A DNA stretch of 64,000 bases, from positions 248,001 to 312,000 of IMG/VR virus record IMGVR_UViG_3300045970_000794; one strand, written 5' to 3'. Each line of letters begins with the position of its first letter. The first letter of the stretch is position 1. Below, piece by piece: positions 75 through 44,738 of this stretch. The translations under genes were made by a program, and so were the position numbers. The notes beneath the pieces are model-generated. The model searched no databases. It was not told the DNA's origin and saw only the letters and a program-made list of their open reading frames with translations.

Positions 75-2144
75 CTATATTTCTCTTAACTTTTTATTAA
101 TATCCTCAATCATATTGTTGATATTATCATTAATCTTTAGGTTTTTATCCGAAATCTTAGTAGTATGTTCACGAATTAATTTATCTTCTGGCACTTGTGA
201 ATTGATTAATCGGTCCATATACATCGATTGATACTTTGATGTTTTAGCATCTAATTTTTCACTAAGCAATTTTTTTTGCTCAGCTAATAATTTTTCAGCA
301 TTCTTTAATAATATTCTGTTAGATTCACCAAATGCTGGGACTTCAGTATCTTCAGCACCAGCTTCACCGCCAGCTTCTGTATCAGCACCAAATTCAGTTT
401 CTGCACCAGCTTCACCACCAGTATCTTCACCACCTTCAACAGGGGTTTCATCACCGAATCCACCACCCCCGAAGCCGCCTCCACCGCCGCCTCCACTAGC
501 ACCAGCATCACCACCAGCTTCTTCACCACCACCAACATCTTCACCAGCAGCAATTTTTTCTAAAGCTTTAGGGTCACCATAAATGTTGTCAACTTTATCA
601 AAGAAACCAGTTTGTTTAATAATAGAAGCTGTTTTAGCAAGTTCAGCAGCCGCAGCTTTTTCAATCCTTTGCTCAAGTAAATCTTGTTTAATTTCTTCAT
701 CACTAAATCCTAGGATTTCTTTTTTAGCTTTTGTCATTGACATTGCTTGGAAACCATTACCAGAATCACCAACTGCATCTCTATATAACGTGATTTTTTG
801 TTGTAAATGTTCAATTTTCAACATCTCAGCTTGAGTTGATGGGTTATTAAGTGTTAGAATGAAATTATCCAATTCATCATCAAAACCTAAAATGTATAAA
901 TGTATGATGGCAATTTTATTTAATTCCATCAATATAGCTTGTTGTATACGGTTAATTGTTCTAGAGAAACGAATATCCATCAATGCTAAATTTTTACCTT
1001 CACCAATAGCAGCATCAAAACCTAAAAATGGTTTTGGAATACGTAAAGCGGTAAATAATTTATTCTGTAAATATTCAATATCAGCAATTTCAGATAAGTT
1101 TGATGCACCTGGTAACGTATCAATTGGGCTTGGTGCGTTTTCATCACGAACTGGAACGAAAATATCTTGGTCTTGCCCTAGTTGATTATACCTTAAATCG
1201 ATTTGCCCTGTTGCTGAATCAACAACTGGTAAACGTTTGAATCTACTTGCAATCTCATTAACATAAGCTGCAACATCATTATCATCAATGTTACCAACAT
1301 ATATCTTATAAATTCTACGTTCTGGAGCTCTAGTAACACGATAAATTAACATCGCATCTTCCGATAACAATAATTGTTTCCAGATTCTACGAGCTTTTTC
1401 AAGTACTGATGTACCATATGGTAATTTTCTATCATCACCTAATAATCTGAAATGCGCTATTTGCCATGAATTGAATTCAACATCTTTGGTTTTCCAATAA
1501 AACTTAATCTTATTATCATACTCAGTTTTAGTACTATCAGAACCCATTACACGACTTCTAGCCAATAACATGTTATATAAATCACCTTCTCTACGTTCCA
1601 TTTCGAAATTAGGCATTTGTCTAGCACCAATAACGCCACCTTTTTCATCAACATTTAAAAACACAAAGTTATCACCATATTTACAAAGATTTCTAGCCCA
1701 TGCTGGTAAATTAGTATGACAATCTAAACGATTGAAGAATAAATCTTCCAATATTGTTTTAACTCTACTACTTTCAGAATAAATGTTTAGAATTTTACCT
1801 TTATCATTAGGTGTTGTTGATTCTTCCATCATAATATCCAATGCGGCCGCAATTTCTGGAAAAAATTCCATAGATTCAAAGTCACTATAAGAACCAATTC
1901 TAGTTACTTCATAATGAATTGATTGTTGATACATTTCTCCATCAACTTTTTGCCATAATTGGCTAAGATAACGATTTTGTTGTGCTTGTGTCTTAGCTAC
2001 ATCATATTCTTGTTTGGATGAAGTTTTTATAATTTCATCACGCCCAATACTATAACGATTAGTTTTTTCTTGAGGAACTTTAACACCTTCTGGACCAAAT
2101 ACTTTATTTAATCGTTGAAATACAGTTAATTTTTTTTCTGCCAT
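75..2144 (-). CDS. Portal protein (T4 gp20-like)
   Basis: YRVTRAPERRIYKIYVGN and AxIEYLQNKLFTALRIP motifs of gp20-type portals; next to TerL; Gly/Glu-rich C-terminal tail. Confidence 0.9.
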   Translation of the reverse strand: MAEKKLTVFQRLNKVFGPEGVKVPQEKTNRYSIGRDEIIKTSSKQEYDVAKTQAQQNRYLSQLWQKVDGEMYQQSIHYEVTRIGSYSDFESMEFFPEIAAALDIMMEESTTPNDKGKILNIYSESSRVKTILEDLFFNRLDCHTNLPAWARNLCKYGDNFVFLNVDEKGGVIGARQMPNFEMERREGDLYNMLLARSRVMGSDSTKTEYDNKIKFYWKTKDVEFNSWQIAHFRLLGDDRKLPYGTSVLEKARRIWKQLLLSEDAMLIYRVTRAPERRIYKIYVGNIDDNDVAAYVNEIASRFKRLPVVDSATGQIDLRYNQLGQDQDIFVPVRDENAPSPIDTLPGASNLSEIADIEYLQNKLFTALRIPKPFLGFDAAIGEGKNLALMDIRFSRTINRIQQAILMELNKIAIIHLYILGFDDELDNFILTLNNPSTQAEMLKIEHLQQKITLYRDAVGDSGNGFQAMSMTKAKKEILGFSDEEIKQDLLEQRIEKAAAAELAKTASIIKQTGFFDKVDNIYGDPKALEKIAAGEDVGGGEEAGGDAGASGGGGGGGFGGGGFGDETPVEGGEDTGGEAGAETEFGADTEAGGEAGAEDTEVPAFGESNRILLKNAEKLLAEQKKLLSEKLDAKTSKYQSMYMDRLINSQVPEDKLIREHTTKISDKNLKINDNINNMIEDINKKLREI

Positions 2145-2459: not shown

Positions 2460-4244
2460 TTATCTCATACCACTAAATAACCATAAGTAATCACCTTTAG
2501 GGTCTTGCATATTCTTAGATACGATTGGTGTGAACTTAGGTTTATTCATTGGCGTTTTGCTACCTTTTGGAACAAAACCAGTATTATATTCATCAGTAGT
2601 ATTTTTACCACCATTAACAACCCAGCTTTTTAGCATCGCCTTAGCTTGATTCTGGACTTTTTCTAAATTTTTAAATGAATGTTCTAACACCCATAATGCC
2701 ATACCTAATGCCATTAATAAATCATCGTGATGACCTTTCATATGGTCTGGCCTACCGTCACGATAAACAAATGTTTTCATTTCGGATGTTAATCTGATTG
2801 AACGTATTTTAACTAAATTCTGTCGGATGCTTTGTTCCAAATGCCCGATTAATGGTAAACGTATTGAATTTACTACTAAACCTGGTTTCTTATCATCATC
2901 CATCACGTGTTTAGCCAAATCTTTTTGGTCTAATAATTTATTACGTTCACTATAATGGATATTTTTATATTTCACTTCAATCAACTTCAATACTGTTGAC
3001 ACACCCCAACCACCAGTAACGTCAACTACTACATATGCATTATACAATAACCCATACTCTTCAACTATTTTTGCTAATAAATCTGGTGGGACTTTACCAC
3101 GATATTCAGCTACTTCTTCCATTGTCGTAAAATCGATAATAACAAAAGTTGAAAAATCGTCACCACCACCACTGGATACGTCAACACCCATTATGTAACG
3201 ATGACCTTCAATTGGTTTTTCCCAAATCCAAATTTCTTTTTTAATACCAGATAGATATTGTGGTTCTTTGCAATTATTTTTAACGTGGAATTCAATAAAT
3301 TCATCATCAATAACCTGACCCCCAGAACCTAGAAATGATACATCTAATTCTTGAGCAATCATTCGTTTATCACCATTCATACCACGACACATTGCTTCGT
3401 ACCATGAAGAAGTTGGTTTATAACCCGTATCTAATTTACTTTTATAGCTTTCAAATGTGAATTCCATTTCAGTGATTACTTCCTCACCTTTTAACCATTT
3501 TAAATCAATATTATAACGGTTATCTTCATACCACTTCATTTCAACAACATTAAAGTCATTATCACCTTTTAGCGAACCATCATATGATTTCCAATACAAT
3601 TCATCGTAACCATTTGGTGTTGAAATTAATGTTGCTTTACCCCCAGTACCTAGCGATGTTAGTGCGGCTCCGAATACTTCATCACCATTATCAATAAACG
3701 CAGCTTCATCCATAACAAGATATGTAGGAGTAAAACCCCTCAACGCATCTTTAGATGTTGCAACCGCTTTGATTTCACATTTATTTGGTAACATTAATTT
3801 TCTATTGGAATCAACTAAGAATATTGATTTTGCTTCTTTTTCAGCATCACCATAATAATCTTCACCCCAAACCCATCTAGGTAATTGTAATAGAAAATCT
3901 TTAATTTTGGCCAAAAATTCTTCGGCCATATCTCTTTTATTTGCTAATATAAGTATTTTTTCTGGACTTTCATCACTAGCAAAACCAACTTTTATCGCTA
4001 AATAAGCCGCCGTTGTGGTTGAAACCCCAGCTTGTCTTGGTTTTGTTACTAAATTAAAACGATGTAATTCATACGCTTGAATTATTTGTCTTTGTCTTGG
4101 AAATAAATAGAATTGTACGAATCCACCCCTACCTTCATTATATGTTTTATCGAACGTCTTAAAATAAGTTTCGATAGCATACGTTGGATTCATCAAACAT
4201 TTAGCATATTCTTGTAATATTTCACCACTAGTTAAATTATTCAT
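2460..4244 (-). CDS. terL: Terminase large subunit (T4 gp17-like)
   Basis: Walker A KPRQAGVSTT, Walker B LVMDEAAF, coupling motif STPNG, nuclease GVDVS and HDDLLMA. Confidence 0.95.
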   Translation of the reverse strand: MNNLTSGEILQEYAKCLMNPTYAIETYFKTFDKTYNEGRGGFVQFYLFPRQRQIIQAYELHRFNLVTKPRQAGVSTTTAAYLAIKVGFASDESPEKILILANKRDMAEEFLAKIKDFLLQLPRWVWGEDYYGDAEKEAKSIFLVDSNRKLMLPNKCEIKAVATSKDALRGFTPTYLVMDEAAFIDNGDEVFGAALTSLGTGGKATLISTPNGYDELYWKSYDGSLKGDNDFNVVEMKWYEDNRYNIDLKWLKGEEVITEMEFTFESYKSKLDTGYKPTSSWYEAMCRGMNGDKRMIAQELDVSFLGSGGQVIDDEFIEFHVKNNCKEPQYLSGIKKEIWIWEKPIEGHRYIMGVDVSSGGGDDFSTFVIIDFTTMEEVAEYRGKVPPDLLAKIVEEYGLLYNAYVVVDVTGGWGVSTVLKLIEVKYKNIHYSERNKLLDQKDLAKHVMDDDKKPGLVVNSIRLPLIGHLEQSIRQNLVKIRSIRLTSEMKTFVYRDGRPDHMKGHHDDLLMALGMALWVLEHSFKNLEKVQNQAKAMLKSWVVNGGKNTTDEYNTGFVPKGSKTPMNKPKFTPIVSKNMQDPKGDYLWLFSGMR

Positions 4245-4380
4245 AAGTTATACTTTTATACTATATAAGTATTTAGAAAAATAAAAATGTTGGTTTTATT
4301 AACTTTTACAATATTTCTTATATTTATTGTTATAACGTTGTATAAACAATTAATAATATTAAAATAAAAACTATTTAATT

Positions 4381-4755
4381 ATGAAAAATGAAACCATAAC
4401 AATTAGGATTGAAGATGAATTGAAAAATGATTTTCAATGTATTTGTAACGAAGAACATACTGATATGTCGGATAAATTATATGAGTATATTATTACTGAA
4501 ATTAAAGCCAAAAAAAATACTATAATTAATACTAATTTTGAAAATATATTTAAATCATTTGGTTATACTAATGTTTTCATAGTGAATTTAGTAATAAATA
4601 AAATAGATAATAAAGAATATCAATTAATGACATTACGATTATCACATGATTATACATTAAGTGATTTTTTAAAAGATAATCAAAATAAAAAAACTTATAT
4701 ATATTTATCTGGTTCAGATTTACCAATTATGATTAGATATTTTACAATTGATTAA
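4381..4755 (+). CDS. Ribbon-helix-helix (CopG-like) domain protein
   Basis: N-terminal TITIRIEDELKNDFQCIC..MSD pattern typical of RHH. Confidence 0.55.
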   Translation: MKNETITIRIEDELKNDFQCICNEEHTDMSDKLYEYIITEIKAKKNTIINTNFENIFKSFGYTNVFIVNLVINKIDNKEYQLMTLRLSHDYTLSDFLKDNQNKKTYIYLSGSDLPIMIRYFTID

Positions 4756-4760
4756 ATAAT

Positions 4761-5363
4761 ATGAAAACTGAAAAACAACAAATTCAATCACAAGAATCAC
4801 AACATAAATATTACATGAAAAATTGTGAAATTATTAAAGTTAAAAAGAAAAAATATTATAATGATAATCGTGAAACTGAGATTAAACGTAAAAGTGAATA
4901 TCAAAAGAAAAATAAAGAAAAGGTAAATGAATATAATCGAAAATATCGTGAAACTGAAAAATATAAATTATGGAAAATAAATAATAAAGAGAAAAATAGG
5001 ATTAATGATAAATTATCTGAAAATAATCGTTTAAAACATAATGCTTTATATAAGTTAAAACACAATATTAGGTCTTTAATTAGAAATTCATTTAAAAATA
5101 AAGAATTTAATAAAAAATCTAAAACAACTGATATACTTGGTTGTTCATTCGAAGAATTTAAATTACATTTAGAATCTAAGTTTGAATCATGGATGAACTG
5201 GGATAATCGTGGCTTATATAATGGCACACCAAATTATGGTTGGGATATTGACCATATTATTGCTCTTGCAACTGCATTGAGTGAAAATGATATAATTAAA
5301 TTAAATCATTATACTAATTTACAACCGCTATGTAGTTATATAAATCGAGATGTTAAAAGGTAA
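4761..5363 (+). CDS. HNH homing-endonuclease-like protein
   Basis: Lys-rich N-terminus, C-terminal WDIDHII..LNHYTNLQPLC..N. Confidence 0.75.
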   Translation: MKTEKQQIQSQESQHKYYMKNCEIIKVKKKKYYNDNRETEIKRKSEYQKKNKEKVNEYNRKYRETEKYKLWKINNKEKNRINDKLSENNRLKHNALYKLKHNIRSLIRNSFKNKEFNKKSKTTDILGCSFEEFKLHLESKFESWMNWDNRGLYNGTPNYGWDIDHIIALATALSENDIIKLNHYTNLQPLCSYINRDVKR

Positions 5364-5423
5364 TATCTCTCCCGATGTAAGCATATTGTATTATTTTATT
5401 AATAAATATGCGTAAAAACGTAA

Positions 5424-6173
5424 TTAGTACTTAAATGGCCAATTATCGGGGTCTCCTTGGGGTAATTTTGGGTCTACCATAGGGAATATAGTAAACTTAT
5501 CCACTGTATCCTTATCCGTCAATAAATTATAAAATAAATCATCACGACCATTATATGTTGATGACATAATCATTTGTCCACCACTTCTGAGTGAATTCGA
5601 TGCTACGTCAAACATTTCTGGGCCATTAATTAGGAATGCTGCATCTGAAATATAAACAATATCAGTCGTATAACCTCTAATTTCACCTGGGTTCACAACT
5701 GAAGTTATTGTACGACCACCAACACCAATAGATTTAATATTTTTATGTCTGAACTTTTCTTTATAATCATTAAAAAGATTATTCCGACTCATTAATATAT
5801 CGGCCATCATAGTGACTATCTGTATTAAATTATTACCAATAACTGATGTTGGTGAAATTATTATTACGTCATTACTATGATAATATGCTTGATAAATTAA
5901 ATAGACGCATACTATTAACCTTTCTCTGGTTCGTTGGTGCTTTGGTATTAGTATGTGCTTATTTGCCATTAGAAGGGTTAATAATACTAAATCTTGGTCA
6001 CCAAATTTATTAGATGATTTATCTAGTATTGTATTAAACTTATCTAATAAAAAATTAATACATTCATCCTTACCGATTGGTGTGAAAAATAATGCTGATA
6101 ATCTAATATTCTCAATAATTGTATCATTTAAAGTGATAAAACTATCGTTATTTAATTTTTCTAATAAATTCAT
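5424..6173 (-). CDS. Truncated, degenerate terminase-ATPase paralog
   Basis: IRGYTTDIVYISDAAFLINGPEMF..SSTYNG aligns with TerL LRGFTPTYLVMDEAAFIDNGDEVF..ISTPNG; no nuclease domain. Confidence 0.7.
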   Translation of the reverse strand: MNLLEKLNNDSFITLNDTIIENIRLSALFFTPIGKDECINFLLDKFNTILDKSSNKFGDQDLVLLTLLMANKHILIPKHQRTRERLIVCVYLIYQAYYHSNDVIIISPTSVIGNNLIQIVTMMADILMSRNNLFNDYKEKFRHKNIKSIGVGGRTITSVVNPGEIRGYTTDIVYISDAAFLINGPEMFDVASNSLRSGGQMIMSSTYNGRDDLFYNLLTDKDTVDKFTIFPMVDPKLPQGDPDNWPFKY

Positions 6174-6192: not shown

Positions 6193-6212
6193 AAAGCCCC
6201 TATTGGGGCTTT
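6193..6212. terminator. Intrinsic terminator hairpin
   Basis: AAAGCCCC-TATT-GGGGCTTT just after the 6216 stop. Confidence 0.75.
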
Positions 6213-6215
6213 ATT

Positions 6216-7463
6216 TTATAATCCGAAATCTGCTAAATCAATTCCATTAATACCATCCGAATCCAAATATTTTGTTTCTTCAAAGGTTTTTCTTCGTTCA
6301 TCAATAGCTTCATTGAATTCATCTTGTTTCATTTCTTTTTTAACTTGAGCAACAATATTGGTAATAATTTCTTTACCACTTGATGTTCCAGCGAAAATTT
6401 CTTTCATACTAGAATTGAACTCATCAACTGGTAATGATGCTAACTCCATATAAACTTGATGTTTAAGATTAAAATCTTCTGGTTCAAACAGTTTAGTAAA
6501 TCGTTCCCATAAAGCTGGTCCTAATCTCATATCCCATGGTTCAGCAGCTAAGAAATCAGCTTTACCTAATACATATTTTTGAATTTTCTCATCTTCTGGT
6601 AAACCATGTGATGATAATAATTCCATAGCACCTTTAGCTAATTCATGAATTAAAACTGGGAATATCAATGCTTGTGCATGAATCTTTGGTTTATCACCAT
6701 CTTTTTTAGGGAATTCAACACGTACAATACCACCTGGTACTCCACCCTCCATTTTATCAATAATGTAATACATATAATCAGCGGCCGCCATTGTTTTAGA
6801 ATATAAATTAGGGAGCCTAGGATTCATTTCAGATAATTCATTATCAACCATATGAAACATGTGGTGATTTTTCTTAGCGGCACCTTGAGTCATAGCATTT
6901 AATAATCTTCTTTTATAAACTTCAGCATTAGCGTTTTCTAAATCTTTATGACTCTTAAATTCCATACCTTCAACTGGTATTGGTTTAGGATTAAGTTTAG
7001 TACCTTCTAATGATATATTATCAACTAATTCAACTGTAATTTCAACATCTTCATCTGGTATATCAAACTCTTCACGAATCATTTTAATTGCTAATTCTTC
7101 AAGTTCTTTTCTATTAGCTTTTTCACTTACCATACAATCTTTAACCAATGGTAATTGAGCCGCTAATATCATTTCTGGTGTGATATTATCAGAATCAAAA
7201 TATTTTTTAGCATTTTTAACCACATCTTTGAATCTTTCACCAATAATTTTTTCTTCAAAATGTTGTTCATCACCTTCTGGAAATGCTGGGTGTTCACCCA
7301 ATGAGTGATTTCTACGTCTAAGCGCAATTTCTAATTCTGAAGCCATTCTTTCACTATGTTTATCATCATAAGTGATTCTAGATTCATTTAAATTATTATG
7401 ATTATTCTTAACATCGGTTAAGATTTTATCAATCATTTTTGAATATTTGTCTTGTTCTGGCAT
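6216..7463 (-). CDS. Hypothetical protein, probably virion/head cluster
   Basis: 415 aa ORF co-oriented with portal and TerL; no catalytic motif recognised. Confidence 0.7.
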   Translation of the reverse strand: MPEQDKYSKMIDKILTDVKNNHNNLNESRITYDDKHSERMASELEIALRRRNHSLGEHPAFPEGDEQHFEEKIIGERFKDVVKNAKKYFDSDNITPEMILAAQLPLVKDCMVSEKANRKELEELAIKMIREEFDIPDEDVEITVELVDNISLEGTKLNPKPIPVEGMEFKSHKDLENANAEVYKRRLLNAMTQGAAKKNHHMFHMVDNELSEMNPRLPNLYSKTMAAADYMYYIIDKMEGGVPGGIVRVEFPKKDGDKPKIHAQALIFPVLIHELAKGAMELLSSHGLPEDEKIQKYVLGKADFLAAEPWDMRLGPALWERFTKLFEPEDFNLKHQVYMELASLPVDEFNSSMKEIFAGTSSGKEIITNIVAQVKKEMKQDEFNEAIDERRKTFEETKYLDSDGINGIDLADFGL

Positions 7464-44099: not shown

Positions 44100-44738
44100 A
44101 TGCCATATAAAGATAAAGATAAAGAAAAACAATACCAAAAGGAATACAGAGAAAAGAATAAAGAATATTTCGAAGAATATCGAAAAATACATAAATATAA
44201 AAATAATAAATCGTATCAGGAATATAGTGAAAATAATAAAGAATCGTCCAAAAAATATTATAAAACTAAGGATAAAATTGTATTACAAAAAAAAGAATAT
44301 TATGAAAATAATAAAGAAAAATTAAAGCAATCTCAAAAGGAATGGCGAGAAAATAATAAAGATTATACGAATAAAATTGCTCGTAATAAATATAAAACAG
44401 ACCCATTATTTAAACTTAAACGAAGTATAAGGCGTATAATTGCTTTCAGTCTTAAAAATAAAGGACTCAAAAAAACCAGTAGAGCACACCTTATTTTAGG
44501 CTGTTCTTTTAATGATTTTAAAACTCATATTGAATCGAAATTTGAATATTGGATGACTTGGGATAACTATGGTTTATATAACGGTACGTTAAATTATGGA
44601 TGGGATATTGACCACATTATACCATTAGCAACGGCAATAAATGAAGATGAAGTGATTAGATTAAATCATTATACTAATTTGCGACCATTATGTAGTCATA
44701 TTAATCGGGTAATAAAACGTAATAAAATTGTGTATTAG
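44100..44738 (+). CDS. HNH homing-endonuclease-like protein (paralog of 4761-5363)
   Basis: GLYNGT.NYGWDIDHII.LATA..E.....LNHYTNL.PLCS.IN shared with 4761. Confidence 0.75.
   Translation: MPYKDKDKEKQYQKEYREKNKEYFEEYRKIHKYKNNKSYQEYSENNKESSKKYYKTKDKIVLQKKEYYENNKEKLKQSQKEWRENNKDYTNKIARNKYKTDPLFKLKRSIRRIIAFSLKNKGLKKTSRAHLILGCSFNDFKTHIESKFEYWMTWDNYGLYNGTLNYGWDIDHIIPLATAINEDEVIRLNHYTNLRPLCSHINRVIKRNKIVY

What the first reader, a model, noticed from the sequence alone, without database searches (positions are those of the whole stretch)
5424..6173. Catalytically dead terminase-ATPase paralog beside the real terL
Seen: the 249-aa protein aligns with the TerL N-terminal domain, but Walker A KPRQAGVSTT reads PKHQRTRER, Walker B DEAAF reads SDAAF and STPNG reads STYNG. 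It has no nuclease domain, yet the ORF is intact. Inference: a pseudo-ATPase that could be a regulatory or decoy subunit of the packaging motor, or a decoy for host sensors that recognise terminase (Avs-type STAND NTPases are established terminase sensors).
Basis: partly seen in the sequence, partly recalled or inferred. Interest (0 to 1): 0.7.

Follow-up and report, generated by a model that had tools for sequence, protein, structure and literature searches.

The report
Dead terminase-ATPase paralog upstream of terL
A jumbo phage from a pond metagenome carries, just upstream of its real DNA-packaging enzyme gene, a conserved but fast-evolving 249-aa copy of that enzyme's ATPase core with ruined catalytic motifs, and similar copies have arisen independently at the same spot in several other phage lineages.

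Summary
Window 5424-6173, on the minus strand, encodes a 249-aa protein homologous to the TerL ATPase core. The family profile matches the phage's own TerL at hhalign E 1.7e-16. The AF2 model's best PDB match is the T4 gp17 ATPase domain.

It is not an orphan or a relic. Ten 235-256-aa orthologues exist. In every context recovered they lie directly 5' of a full-length terL. They keep their length and some family-specific residues. Their dN is about 3-4 times that of TerL, with omega below 1. Catalytic residues decay stepwise across the family, and P0001 is the most degenerate.

Independent look-alikes sit at the same place in other lineages:
- CBB_274 of Rak2-like phages, noted in 2017.
- P0022.
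- P0028, which carries an N-terminal MerR helix-turn-helix.

Best reading: a non-catalytic TerL-derived partner of terminase filling the small-terminase (TerS) niche. This is inferred, not shown. The Avs-decoy idea is weak. The 1.2-kb gap to terL is a later HNH homing-endonuclease cassette that invaded terL's first codons.

The parts
5424..6173 (-). P0001: 249-aa stand-alone TerL ATPase-core paralog (pseudo-ATPase).
   Evidence: ORF and translation. Homology to TerL. gp17-ATPase fold. Orthologues P0006-P0013, P0015 and P0033.
5913..5951 (-). Former Walker A / P-loop, residues 75-87, LIPKHQRTRERLI. K78 is kept. The TerL-invariant R70, Q71, G73 and S75 read Q, R, R and R. E84 is the family-specific Glu.
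   Evidence: Column table against 24 TerLs and 10 paralogs. Coordinates checked.
5634..5663 (-). Former Walker B strand, residues 171-180, DIVYISDAAF. The Walker B Asp is Ser and the catalytic Glu is Asp.
5547..5564 (-). Former C (coupling) motif, residues 204-209, SSTYNG, where TerL has ISTPNG.
5433..5495 (-). Family-specific conserved C-terminal segment FTIFPM..DPDNWPF, with low pLDDT at the tail. It is probably the counterpart of TerL FNVVEMKWYEDNRYNIDLKW.
   Evidence: Alignments A2 and A3, hhalign, C-termini listing.
6193..6212 (-). Terminator-like hairpin after the 415-aa gene. It is conserved with compensatory changes in relatives, and P0001 starts 19 nt after it.
6216..7463 (-). P0003: conserved 415-aa protein of unknown function, the usual upstream neighbour of the paralog-terL pair.
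   Evidence: Model and fold searches.
5402..5411 (-). GCATATTTAT box, conserved just upstream of terL in relatives. Here it precedes only the stranded terL remnant.
5328..5384 (-). Stranded original 5' end of terL: MLTSGEIL plus 10 junk codons and a stop. 23 of the first 25 nt match the terL start of L083.
4761..5363 (+). P0004: HNH homing-endonuclease-like gene (DIDHIIAL...NLQPLC..N; phrog_1035). Its stop codon is the insertion junction.
4381..4755 (+). P0005: 124-aa ORF co-inserted with the HNH gene. No family match.
2460..4244 (-). terL, 594 aa, with all catalytic motifs. Its first roughly 10 codons (MNNLTSGEIL) and its promoter region are supplied by the cassette.
75..2144 (-). T4-type portal (gp20 family), downstream of terL and an 81-aa ORF at 2191-2436.

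Best explanation
P0001 belongs to an orthologous family of about 250-aa proteins. The family arose by partial tandem duplication of the 5' half of terL in one subclade of uncultured T4-superfamily jumbo phages.

The family keeps the RecA-like ATPase core of TerL. It has lost the lid subdomain, the nuclease domain and, step by step, the catalytic residues. P0001 is the most degenerate member.

I propose that it no longer hydrolyses ATP and works as a non-catalytic partner of the terminase. It would contact TerL through surfaces inherited from the TerL-TerL ATPase interface. Its role would be to regulate or scaffold assembly or activity of the packaging or cutting enzyme, which is the genomic and functional niche normally held by the small terminase (TerS).

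Shown here: homology, fold, motif loss, conservation, synteny and recurrence.
Inferred: loss of ATPase activity, binding to TerL and the TerS-like role.
For: 1. Homology and fold.

2. Family. An exhaustive HMMER search found full-length 235-256-aa homologues at 28-46% identity, E 5e-55 to 2.5e-7. P0033 is a further basal member.

3. Synteny. In every context recovered, the paralog lies directly 5' of a full-length 584-606-aa terL on the same strand with gaps of about 40 nt. This includes L085, where the upstream context differs.

4. Constraint. All ORFs are intact and length is kept. Residues K78, E84, Y91, L92, A178, S205 and G209 are invariant within the family. The most conserved blocks are the former motif regions. 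dN is 0.50-0.76, against 0.17-0.25 for TerL and 0.15-0.17 for the 415-aa neighbour. NG86 omega is below 1 in all 10 pairs.

5. Motif decay is graded. P0015 still has DE and STPNG. P0009-P0013 lost the Walker B Asp. P0006-P0008 also lost the catalytic Glu. P0001 further lost the P-loop Gly, Arg and Ser. A Glu sits at the canonical Walker-A lysine position in 9 of 10 members.

6. Recurrence. Independent truncated, motif-degenerate TerL-N paralogs occupy the same position in other lineages:
- CBB_274 in phage CBB, which groups with the T4/CBB TerLs and not with this family.
- P0022, which groups with its own TerL clade at 99/94 support.
- P0028.

7. P0028 carries an N-terminal MerR HTH (PF00376, E 3e-12). 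That is a typical small-terminase architecture: a DNA-binding HTH plus an oligomerising or TerL-binding body.

8. No recognisable TerS family was found in the complete 362-kb genome (PF11053, PF03592, PF12728).
Against: - No physical interaction is shown. The one TerL + P0001 complex prediction returned 'no answer'.
- Close relatives with 54-60% identical TerL (L003, L004, L006, L007) lack the paralog at the syntenic site.
- Two 93%-complete genomes with about 41-44% identical TerL lack it anywhere. It therefore cannot be an indispensable TerS of the whole lineage.
- P0001 itself has no detectable HTH.
- The fast evolution would also fit an arms-race or relaxed-constraint protein.
- dS is saturated, so omega is only roughly bounded.
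- P0001 follows a terminator-like hairpin with no evident promoter of its own, and expression is unverified because only DNA runs were found.
Confidence: 0.45

Rival explanations
1. Immune decoy or sponge. The paralog binds host sensors that recognise the TerL ATPase domain (Avs1-3, Upx) and shields the real TerL.
For: It evolves 3-4 times faster than TerL in dN and has a patchy distribution. The TerL ATPase domain alone is sufficient for recognition by EcAvs2 and Upx (Evans et al. 2026 preprint). The model resembles TerL bound in Avs3 (8dgc_E).
Against: In the same preprint, TerL ATPase domains and the TerL-like T4 vs.8 activate EcAvs2. A binder would therefore be expected to trigger the sensor, not damp it. 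EcAvs2 contacts the terminase-bound ATP and a bridging ATP, and P0001's P-loop and Walker B are destroyed. Strict linkage to terL and the HTH-fused analogue are not explained by a decoy role. The gene sits in the late structural operon, which is not a typical place or time for anti-defence genes.
Confidence: 0.1
2. Functionless relic. A partial terL duplicate is drifting towards loss, and P0001, the most degenerate copy, is effectively already a pseudogene whose frame is still open.
For: P0001 has the most eroded motifs of the family and a longer branch than its nearest orthologues (0.93 vs about 0.6). The paralog is absent from related phages. It follows a terminator-like hairpin and lacks an obvious promoter.
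Against: Eleven family ORFs, ten complete and one cut short, are intact at 25-46% identity in AT-rich genomes. A 249-codon open frame has chance probability about 2e-10. Length, N- and C-terminal family motifs and invariant residues are kept. Omega is below 1 in all pairs. The same arrangement was fixed independently at least four times.
Confidence: 0.15
3. By-product of the homing-endonuclease cassette. The partial terL copy was carried in, or created, by the HNH element next to it.
For: The HNH gene lies 60 nt from P0001's stop. The region has lower GC, and a short stretch of terL 5' coding sequence really was duplicated by the insertion.
Against: Eight orthologues sit in the same place next to terL with no HNH or orf124. 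The cassette's boundaries lie wholly downstream of P0001, running from the HNH stop codon to the new terL start.
Confidence: 0.02
4. Still a nucleotide-binding or slow ATPase switch subunit with a non-canonical site.
For: K78 is invariant. Most family members keep K-x-R-Q-x-G-x-T and half keep the catalytic Glu. The former active-site blocks are the best conserved.
Against: P0001 itself lacks the P-loop Gly, Arg and Ser, the Walker B Asp and the catalytic Glu. An acidic residue sits at the canonical Lys position family-wide. To my own knowledge, in T4 gp17 even conservative changes at the Walker B Asp and catalytic Glu abolish function (Rao laboratory mutagenesis; not re-read here).
Confidence: 0.08

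Closest known systems
TerL N-terminal ATPase domain (T4 gp17 type; Pfam PF03237 Terminase_6N)
   Same: Same RecA-like ASCE core. The best structural matches are gp17 2o0h, 2o0j and 3cpe. The family profile matches TerLs at E 1e-13 to 1e-17.
   Different: No lid subdomain and no nuclease domain. Walker A, Walker B, the catalytic Glu and the C-motif are degraded. It falls below Pfam's threshold. The N-terminal 53 residues are family-specific.
CBB_274 and its homologues in Rak2-like jumbo phages. Buttimer et al. 2017 (PMC5259590) also report the feature for Sinorhizobium phages phiM12 and phiN3.
   Same: A 235-aa truncated gp17-like protein directly upstream of the real terL. By my reading its motifs are also degenerate (IRGAGLST; IIYDS). 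The function is unknown and it was only noted as 'unusual'.
   Different: Independent origin. CBB_274 groups with the T4/CBB TerLs and not with this family. hhalign to the family gives only 86% probability, E 5e-6, against 98.7% for the window's own TerL.
T4 vs.8, a stand-alone TerL-like ATPase (Evans et al. 2026 preprint)
   Same: A small stand-alone protein homologous to the TerL ATPase domain in a T4-type phage.
   Different: Its Walker A and B are intact (GGRQSGKS, YIIDE). It is not adjacent to gene 17. It is not specifically related to this family (hhalign probability 6.7%). It activates EcAvs2.
Small terminase (TerS; e.g. T4 gp16, HTH-type TerS)
   Same: The gene lies immediately 5' of terL. 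It is fast-evolving and small. The analogue P0028 has an N-terminal MerR-type HTH, as many TerS do.
   Different: There is no sequence or fold relationship to any TerS family. No HTH is detected in P0001. Oligomeric state and DNA binding are unknown.
P0022 (L101) and P0028 (L102): metagenomic truncated TerL paralogs found here
   Same: They are 260-296 aa, have degenerate motifs (both P0022 and P0001 read SDAAF at Walker B), and lie directly 5' of a full-length terL.
   Different: They come from separate duplications of their own TerLs (34% and 29% identity to it). P0028 adds a DNA-binding domain.

Membership tests
Large terminase TerL (T4 gp17 type) | ASCE/RecA-like ATPase fold homologous to gp17 N-subdomain I | tested here: met
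   Foldseek 2o0h E 2e-9, TM 0.60. hhalign to own TerL E 1.7e-16.
Large terminase TerL (T4 gp17 type) | Functional Walker A (here K-x-R-Q-x-G-x-S-T, invariant in 24 of 24 TerLs) | tested here: not met
   P0001 reads K-H-Q-R-T-R-E-R-L.
Large terminase TerL (T4 gp17 type) | Walker B Asp plus catalytic Glu (hhhhDE) | tested here: not met
   P0001 reads VYISD. Asp is replaced by Ser and Glu by Asp.
Large terminase TerL (T4 gp17 type) | C-terminal RNase-H-like nuclease domain | tested here: not met
   The protein ends at about TerL residue 250. There is no nuclease match.
Large terminase TerL (T4 gp17 type) | Pfam Terminase_6N at gathering score | tested here: not met
   No Pfam hit for P0001 at E<=0.01. 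Only the relatives P0015, P0033 and P0036 reach it.
Truncated TerL paralog 5' of terL (CBB_274 kind) | About 235-300-aa protein homologous only to the TerL N-terminal ATPase region | tested here: met
Truncated TerL paralog 5' of terL (CBB_274 kind) | Encoded immediately upstream of, and co-oriented with, a complete terL | tested here: met
   Orthologues lie about 40 nt from terL. In the window the pair is split by a later 1.18-kb HNH cassette.
Truncated TerL paralog 5' of terL (CBB_274 kind) | Common descent with CBB_274 | tested here: not met
   The trees place CBB_274 with the T4/CBB TerLs, and the family is monophyletic elsewhere. Long branches make this provisional.
Small terminase (TerS) | Gene directly upstream of terL | tested here: met
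Small terminase (TerS) | Match to a TerS family or an N-terminal DNA-binding HTH | tested here: not met
   No Pfam or PHROG TerS or HTH hit for P0001. Only the independent analogue P0028 has a MerR HTH.
Small terminase (TerS) | Ring oligomer that binds TerL and modulates its ATPase and nuclease | not testable with these tools
   The complex prediction gave no answer. This needs biochemistry.
Anti-defence decoy for terminase sensors (Avs/Upx) | Binds the sensor without triggering it, or relieves defence | not testable with these tools
   Literature context only, and it argues against rather than for.

The most novel reading that the evidence does not exclude
Tailed phages have repeatedly (at least four times) built a new kind of small or regulatory terminase subunit. 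They duplicated the 5' half of terL and killed its ATPase. The dead TerL core supplies TerL-binding and oligomerisation, and in some lineages an added HTH supplies DNA recognition. Many jumbo phages with 'no TerS' would then actually use a TerL-derived pseudo-enzyme.
Probability: 0.3. Interest if true: 0.75.

Novelty: new member of a known kind. Interest (0 to 1): 0.5.

Why it matters
The small terminase is the least understood and least recognisable component of phage packaging machines, and many jumbo phages have none annotated.

A conserved, catalytically dead TerL-core protein fixed independently at the TerS locus in several lineages gives a concrete, testable candidate for that missing partner. 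It would also be an example of pseudo-enzyme evolution in a viral motor.

It matters for annotation too. These genes are routinely labelled 'terminase large subunit', which inflates TerL counts and can mislead TerL-based phylogeny and packaging-type prediction.

It is also relevant to immune sensing, because stand-alone TerL-like ATPase domains can be ligands of Avs2 and Upx.

Tried and rejected
- **Homologue searches that found nothing.** The word-indexed protein search, INPHARED tblastn and megablast and pattern scans of IMG/VR and JGI metagenomes found no homologue of P0001. Only the exhaustive HMMER search did. A profile run through the word index recovered few members.
- **Complex prediction.** Complex prediction on TerL + P0001 gave 'no answer' (score 0.00). 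It is evidence neither for nor against binding.
- **Microdiversity and expression.** Only three DNA runs (pond and sediment) hold the sequence. One is probably the source. The contigs gave no usable variants over P0001 and there is no RNA.
- **Synonymous-only variation.** The three contigs encoding P0010 are identical.
- **dN/dS.** dS is saturated (1.1-2.5), so only omega below 1 and relative dN can be stated.
- **C-terminal mimicry idea.** I considered that the paralog's C-terminal DPDNWPF mimics TerL's conserved extreme C-terminus (..DYLWLFSGMR). I downgraded it. The segment aligns more simply with the internal TerL motif D241-x-R243...W250.
- **HEG-carried origin.** The idea that the paralog was brought by the HNH cassette is rejected.
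- **The 415-aa neighbour as TerS.** The model is confident (pLDDT 83.8), but it has no PDB match and only uncharacterised AFDB matches.
- **TerS Pfam families** PF11053, PF03592 and PF12728 are absent from the genome. TerS proteins are too divergent for this to prove absence.
- **The GCATATTTAT box** is not a general promoter motif in the window.

Full report
**Setting.** The window is bases 248,001-312,000 of a 362,102-bp IMG/VR phage genome with direct terminal repeats. The genome was seen in pond metagenomes. GC is about 30%. On the minus strand, the left end of the window encodes in this order:
- a conserved 415-aa protein (P0003, 6216-7463);
- the finding (P0001, 5424-6173);
- a full-length TerL (P0002, 2460-4244; Pfam Terminase_6N, phrog_2);
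- an 81-aa ORF;
- a T4-type portal.

No cultured phage has a TerL more than 30% identical.

**Observation.** Otherwise everything it described is there.
- P0001 is 249 aa.
- The frame is open against a chance expectation of about 2e-10, and it has coding-type positional GC.
- BLASTP to the neighbouring TerL gives 40% identity over 52 residues spanning Walker B to the C-motif, E 3e-10.
- A PHROG TerL family is hit at E 1e-5.
- The AF2 model (pLDDT 82.8) has the T4 gp17 ATPase domain as its best PDB match (E 2e-9, TM 0.60).

I aligned 24 real TerLs of this group. Positions K68, R70, Q71, G73, N102, P122, R169, G170, D179, E180, S208, T209, P210 and G212 are invariant in all of them. At these positions P0001 reads K, Q, R, R, P, M, R, G, S, D, S, T, Y and G. 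So the P-loop Arg, Gln and Gly, the Walker B Asp, the catalytic Glu and the C-motif Pro are all gone. The protein stops at about TerL residue 250. It is the RecA-like core only, with no lid subdomain and no nuclease.

**It is a family, not an orphan.** An exhaustive HMMER search of 1.84 billion representatives found eight full-length 235-256-aa homologues (P0006-P0012 and P0015) at 28-46% identity, E 5e-55 to 2.5e-7, plus P0013, a 197-aa member cut short. Below them only real TerLs matched, and weakly. P0033 is a further, basal member. I looked up the genomic context of eight members, seven from this set and P0033. In all eight the gene lies immediately 5' of a complete 584-606-aa terL, on the same strand, with gaps of about 40 nt. 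Usually it follows the 415-aa gene. In L085 the upstream context is different, yet the paralog-terL pair is kept.

The family has features of its own:
- an N-terminal LNxxSYxxL segment;
- a Glu right after the P-loop Gly, at the canonical Walker-A lysine position, in 9 of 10 members;
- a Pro replacing TerL N102;
- a C-terminal FTxFPMxNP..DPDNWP segment.

**Rate and constraint.** Within the paralog-bearing clade, amino-acid identity is as follows:

| Protein | Identity |
|---|---|
| TerL | 65-80% |
| 415-aa neighbour | 73-79% |
| Paralog | 28-44% |

- Tree branches are 0.6-1.6 for paralogs and 0.1-0.25 for their TerLs.
- NG86 dN is 0.50-0.76 for the paralog, 0.17-0.25 for TerL and 0.15-0.17 for the neighbour.
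- dS is saturated, but omega is below 1 in all ten pairs.

The gene is therefore under purifying selection that is several-fold weaker than on TerL, or is mixed with diversifying selection.

**Graded loss of catalysis.**
- P0015 still has Walker B DE and STPNG.
- P0009-P0013 have lost the Walker B Asp but keep the Glu.
- P0006-P0008 have lost both.
- P0001 has in addition lost the P-loop Gly, Arg and Ser and the Q-motif register.

The former motif regions remain the best conserved blocks, probably as core strands.

**Distribution.**
- Relatives with 54-60% identical TerL (L003, L004, L006, L007) have the 415-aa gene, the same hairpin and then terL about 45 nt later. They have no room for the paralog.
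- Two 93%-complete jumbo genomes with about 41-44% identical TerL contain no match to the family profile other than TerL itself.

The family is confined to one subclade.

**Recurrence elsewhere.** Buttimer et al. 2017 noted that phage CBB has a truncated gp17-domain protein (CBB_274) beside its real TerL. They said the same holds in other Rak2-like phages and in phiM12 and phiN3, and called it unusual (PMC5259590). I fetched the CBB region.
- CBB_274 is 235 aa and overlaps the start of terL.
- By my reading it is also degenerate (IRGAGLST for Walker A, IIYDS for Walker B).
- In trees it joins the T4/CBB TerL group, not the P0001 family, despite its very long branch.
- Its profile match to the family (86%, E 5e-6) is weaker than the window TerL's match (98.7%, E 1.7e-16).

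Among the weak hits, two more short degenerate proteins sit directly 5' of complete terL genes:
- P0022 has GFRGAYVTT and FISDAAF. It is 34% identical to its own TerL and groups with that TerL's clade at 99/94 support.
- P0028 has HQKQEVDVTT and VFVDNADF. It carries an N-terminal MerR-type HTH above Pfam's cut-off (E 3e-12).

Together this makes at least four independent origins of the same arrangement.

**Mechanism.**
- Shown: a conserved, TerL-linked, catalytically eroded TerL core.
- Inferred: it acts with TerL.

Four things point to a TerS-like or regulatory partner built from a dead TerL core:
- The locus is where TerS genes normally sit.
- TerS-type proteins are small and fast-evolving.
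- One independent analogue has acquired the DNA-binding HTH typical of TerS.
- No TerS family is detectable in this complete genome.

Three points count against it. The paralog is absent from sister clades. P0001 has no HTH. The single complex prediction gave no answer. I put this reading at about 0.45.

**The decoy idea.** A 2026 preprint (10.64898/2026.04.30.721860) reports three relevant things:
- The TerL ATPase domain alone activates EcAvs2 and Upx.
- EcAvs2 contacts the terminase-bound ATP plus a bridging ATP.
- T4 vs.8, a stand-alone TerL-like ATPase with intact Walker motifs, is itself toxic with EcAvs2.

A TerL-like binder would thus be expected to trigger the sensor, not to damp it. 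A protein without an ATP site lacks part of the recognised surface. vs.8 is not specifically related to the P0001 family. I keep the decoy or sponge reading at about 0.1.

**The gap between P0001 and terL.** It is a separate, later event. Right after P0001's stop comes the GCATATTTAT box that precedes terL in relatives. Then comes ATG CTT ACA TCG GGA GAG ATA TTA (MLTSGEIL), which matches the terL start of L083 at 23 of 25 nt. After that the sequence runs into junk and a stop.

The junction is exactly the stop codon of an HNH endonuclease gene on the other strand (P0004). Together with a 124-aa ORF, that gene forms a cassette. The cassette also supplies a new upstream region and a new terL start, MNN-LTSGEIL, with different synonymous codons.

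P0004 has eight further copies in the genome at 27-67% identity. HNH-free orthologous loci show that the paralog predates this insertion and is independent of it.

**Verdict.** The pseudo-ATPase reading is supported. The regulatory-partner reading is plausible and strengthened by comparative evidence. The Avs-decoy reading is weak. The kind of gene has been noticed before but never characterised. This is a new, independently evolved family of that kind.

Noticed in passing
window 4215-5384 (cassette); remnant 5328-5384 (-): An HNH homing-endonuclease cassette (orf124 + HNH on the + strand) inserted after codon 8 of terL. The original promoter box and MLTSGEIL start are stranded behind P0001. 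The cassette provides a new terL start (MNNLTSGEIL) with different synonymous codons, which may make the resident site uncuttable.
   Followed up: partly
window 44250-44720 (+); genome coordinates 348112, 51787, 105242, 194230, 75679, 241774, 180888: Eight further copies of the HNH protein P0004 (27-67% identity) are scattered through the 362-kb genome. One of them (near genome 194230) lies beside a partial copy of orf124's N-terminus at 193473.
   Followed up: no
window 6193-6212: A terminator-like hairpin after the 415-aa gene is conserved with compensatory stem changes in the window, L083, L084, L088, L003 and L006. The paralog, where present, always starts 15-30 nt after it.
   Followed up: partly
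window 6216-7463 (-): P0003 is a highly conserved (73-79% identity), acidic (net charge -22), mostly helical 415-aa protein, found upstream of terL throughout this phage group. The AF2 model is confident, but it has no PDB match and only uncharacterised AFDB clusters.
   Followed up: partly
window 2460-2510 (-), TerL C-terminus: The extreme C-terminus of TerL (..NMQDPxGDYLWLFSGMR) is conserved across the whole TerL group down to 41% identity, suggesting a docking peptide. It loosely resembles the paralog's C-terminal DPDNWPF. This is unexplained and may be coincidence.
   Followed up: partly
window 4020-4050 (-), TerL residues 66-76: All 24 TerLs of this group have a deviant Walker A, K-x-R-Q-x-G-[VI]-S-T. 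It lacks the canonical GK[ST] lysine and has an invariant Lys five residues upstream of the Gly.
   Followed up: no
L102:2732-3514 (P0028) and L102:3541-5361: A MerR-HTH domain fused to a dead TerL ATPase core lies directly upstream of a 606-aa TerL in an unrelated metagenomic phage. This is a TerS-like architecture built on a TerL scaffold.
   Followed up: partly
L101:74-964 (P0022) and L101:1003-2757: A 296-aa recent duplicate of the TerL N-domain, 34% identical to its own TerL, has degenerate Walker A and the same SDAAF Walker B as P0001.
   Followed up: partly
L088:7573-8001: One relative has an extra 142-aa ORF between the 415-aa gene and the paralog. It was not characterised.
   Followed up: no
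L100:1254-1913 (T4 vs.8): T4 vs.8 gives a weak Terminase_6N match (E 0.01) and has intact GGRQSGKS and YIIDE motifs. This fits the preprint's description of it as a stand-alone TerL-like ATPase.
   Followed up: partly
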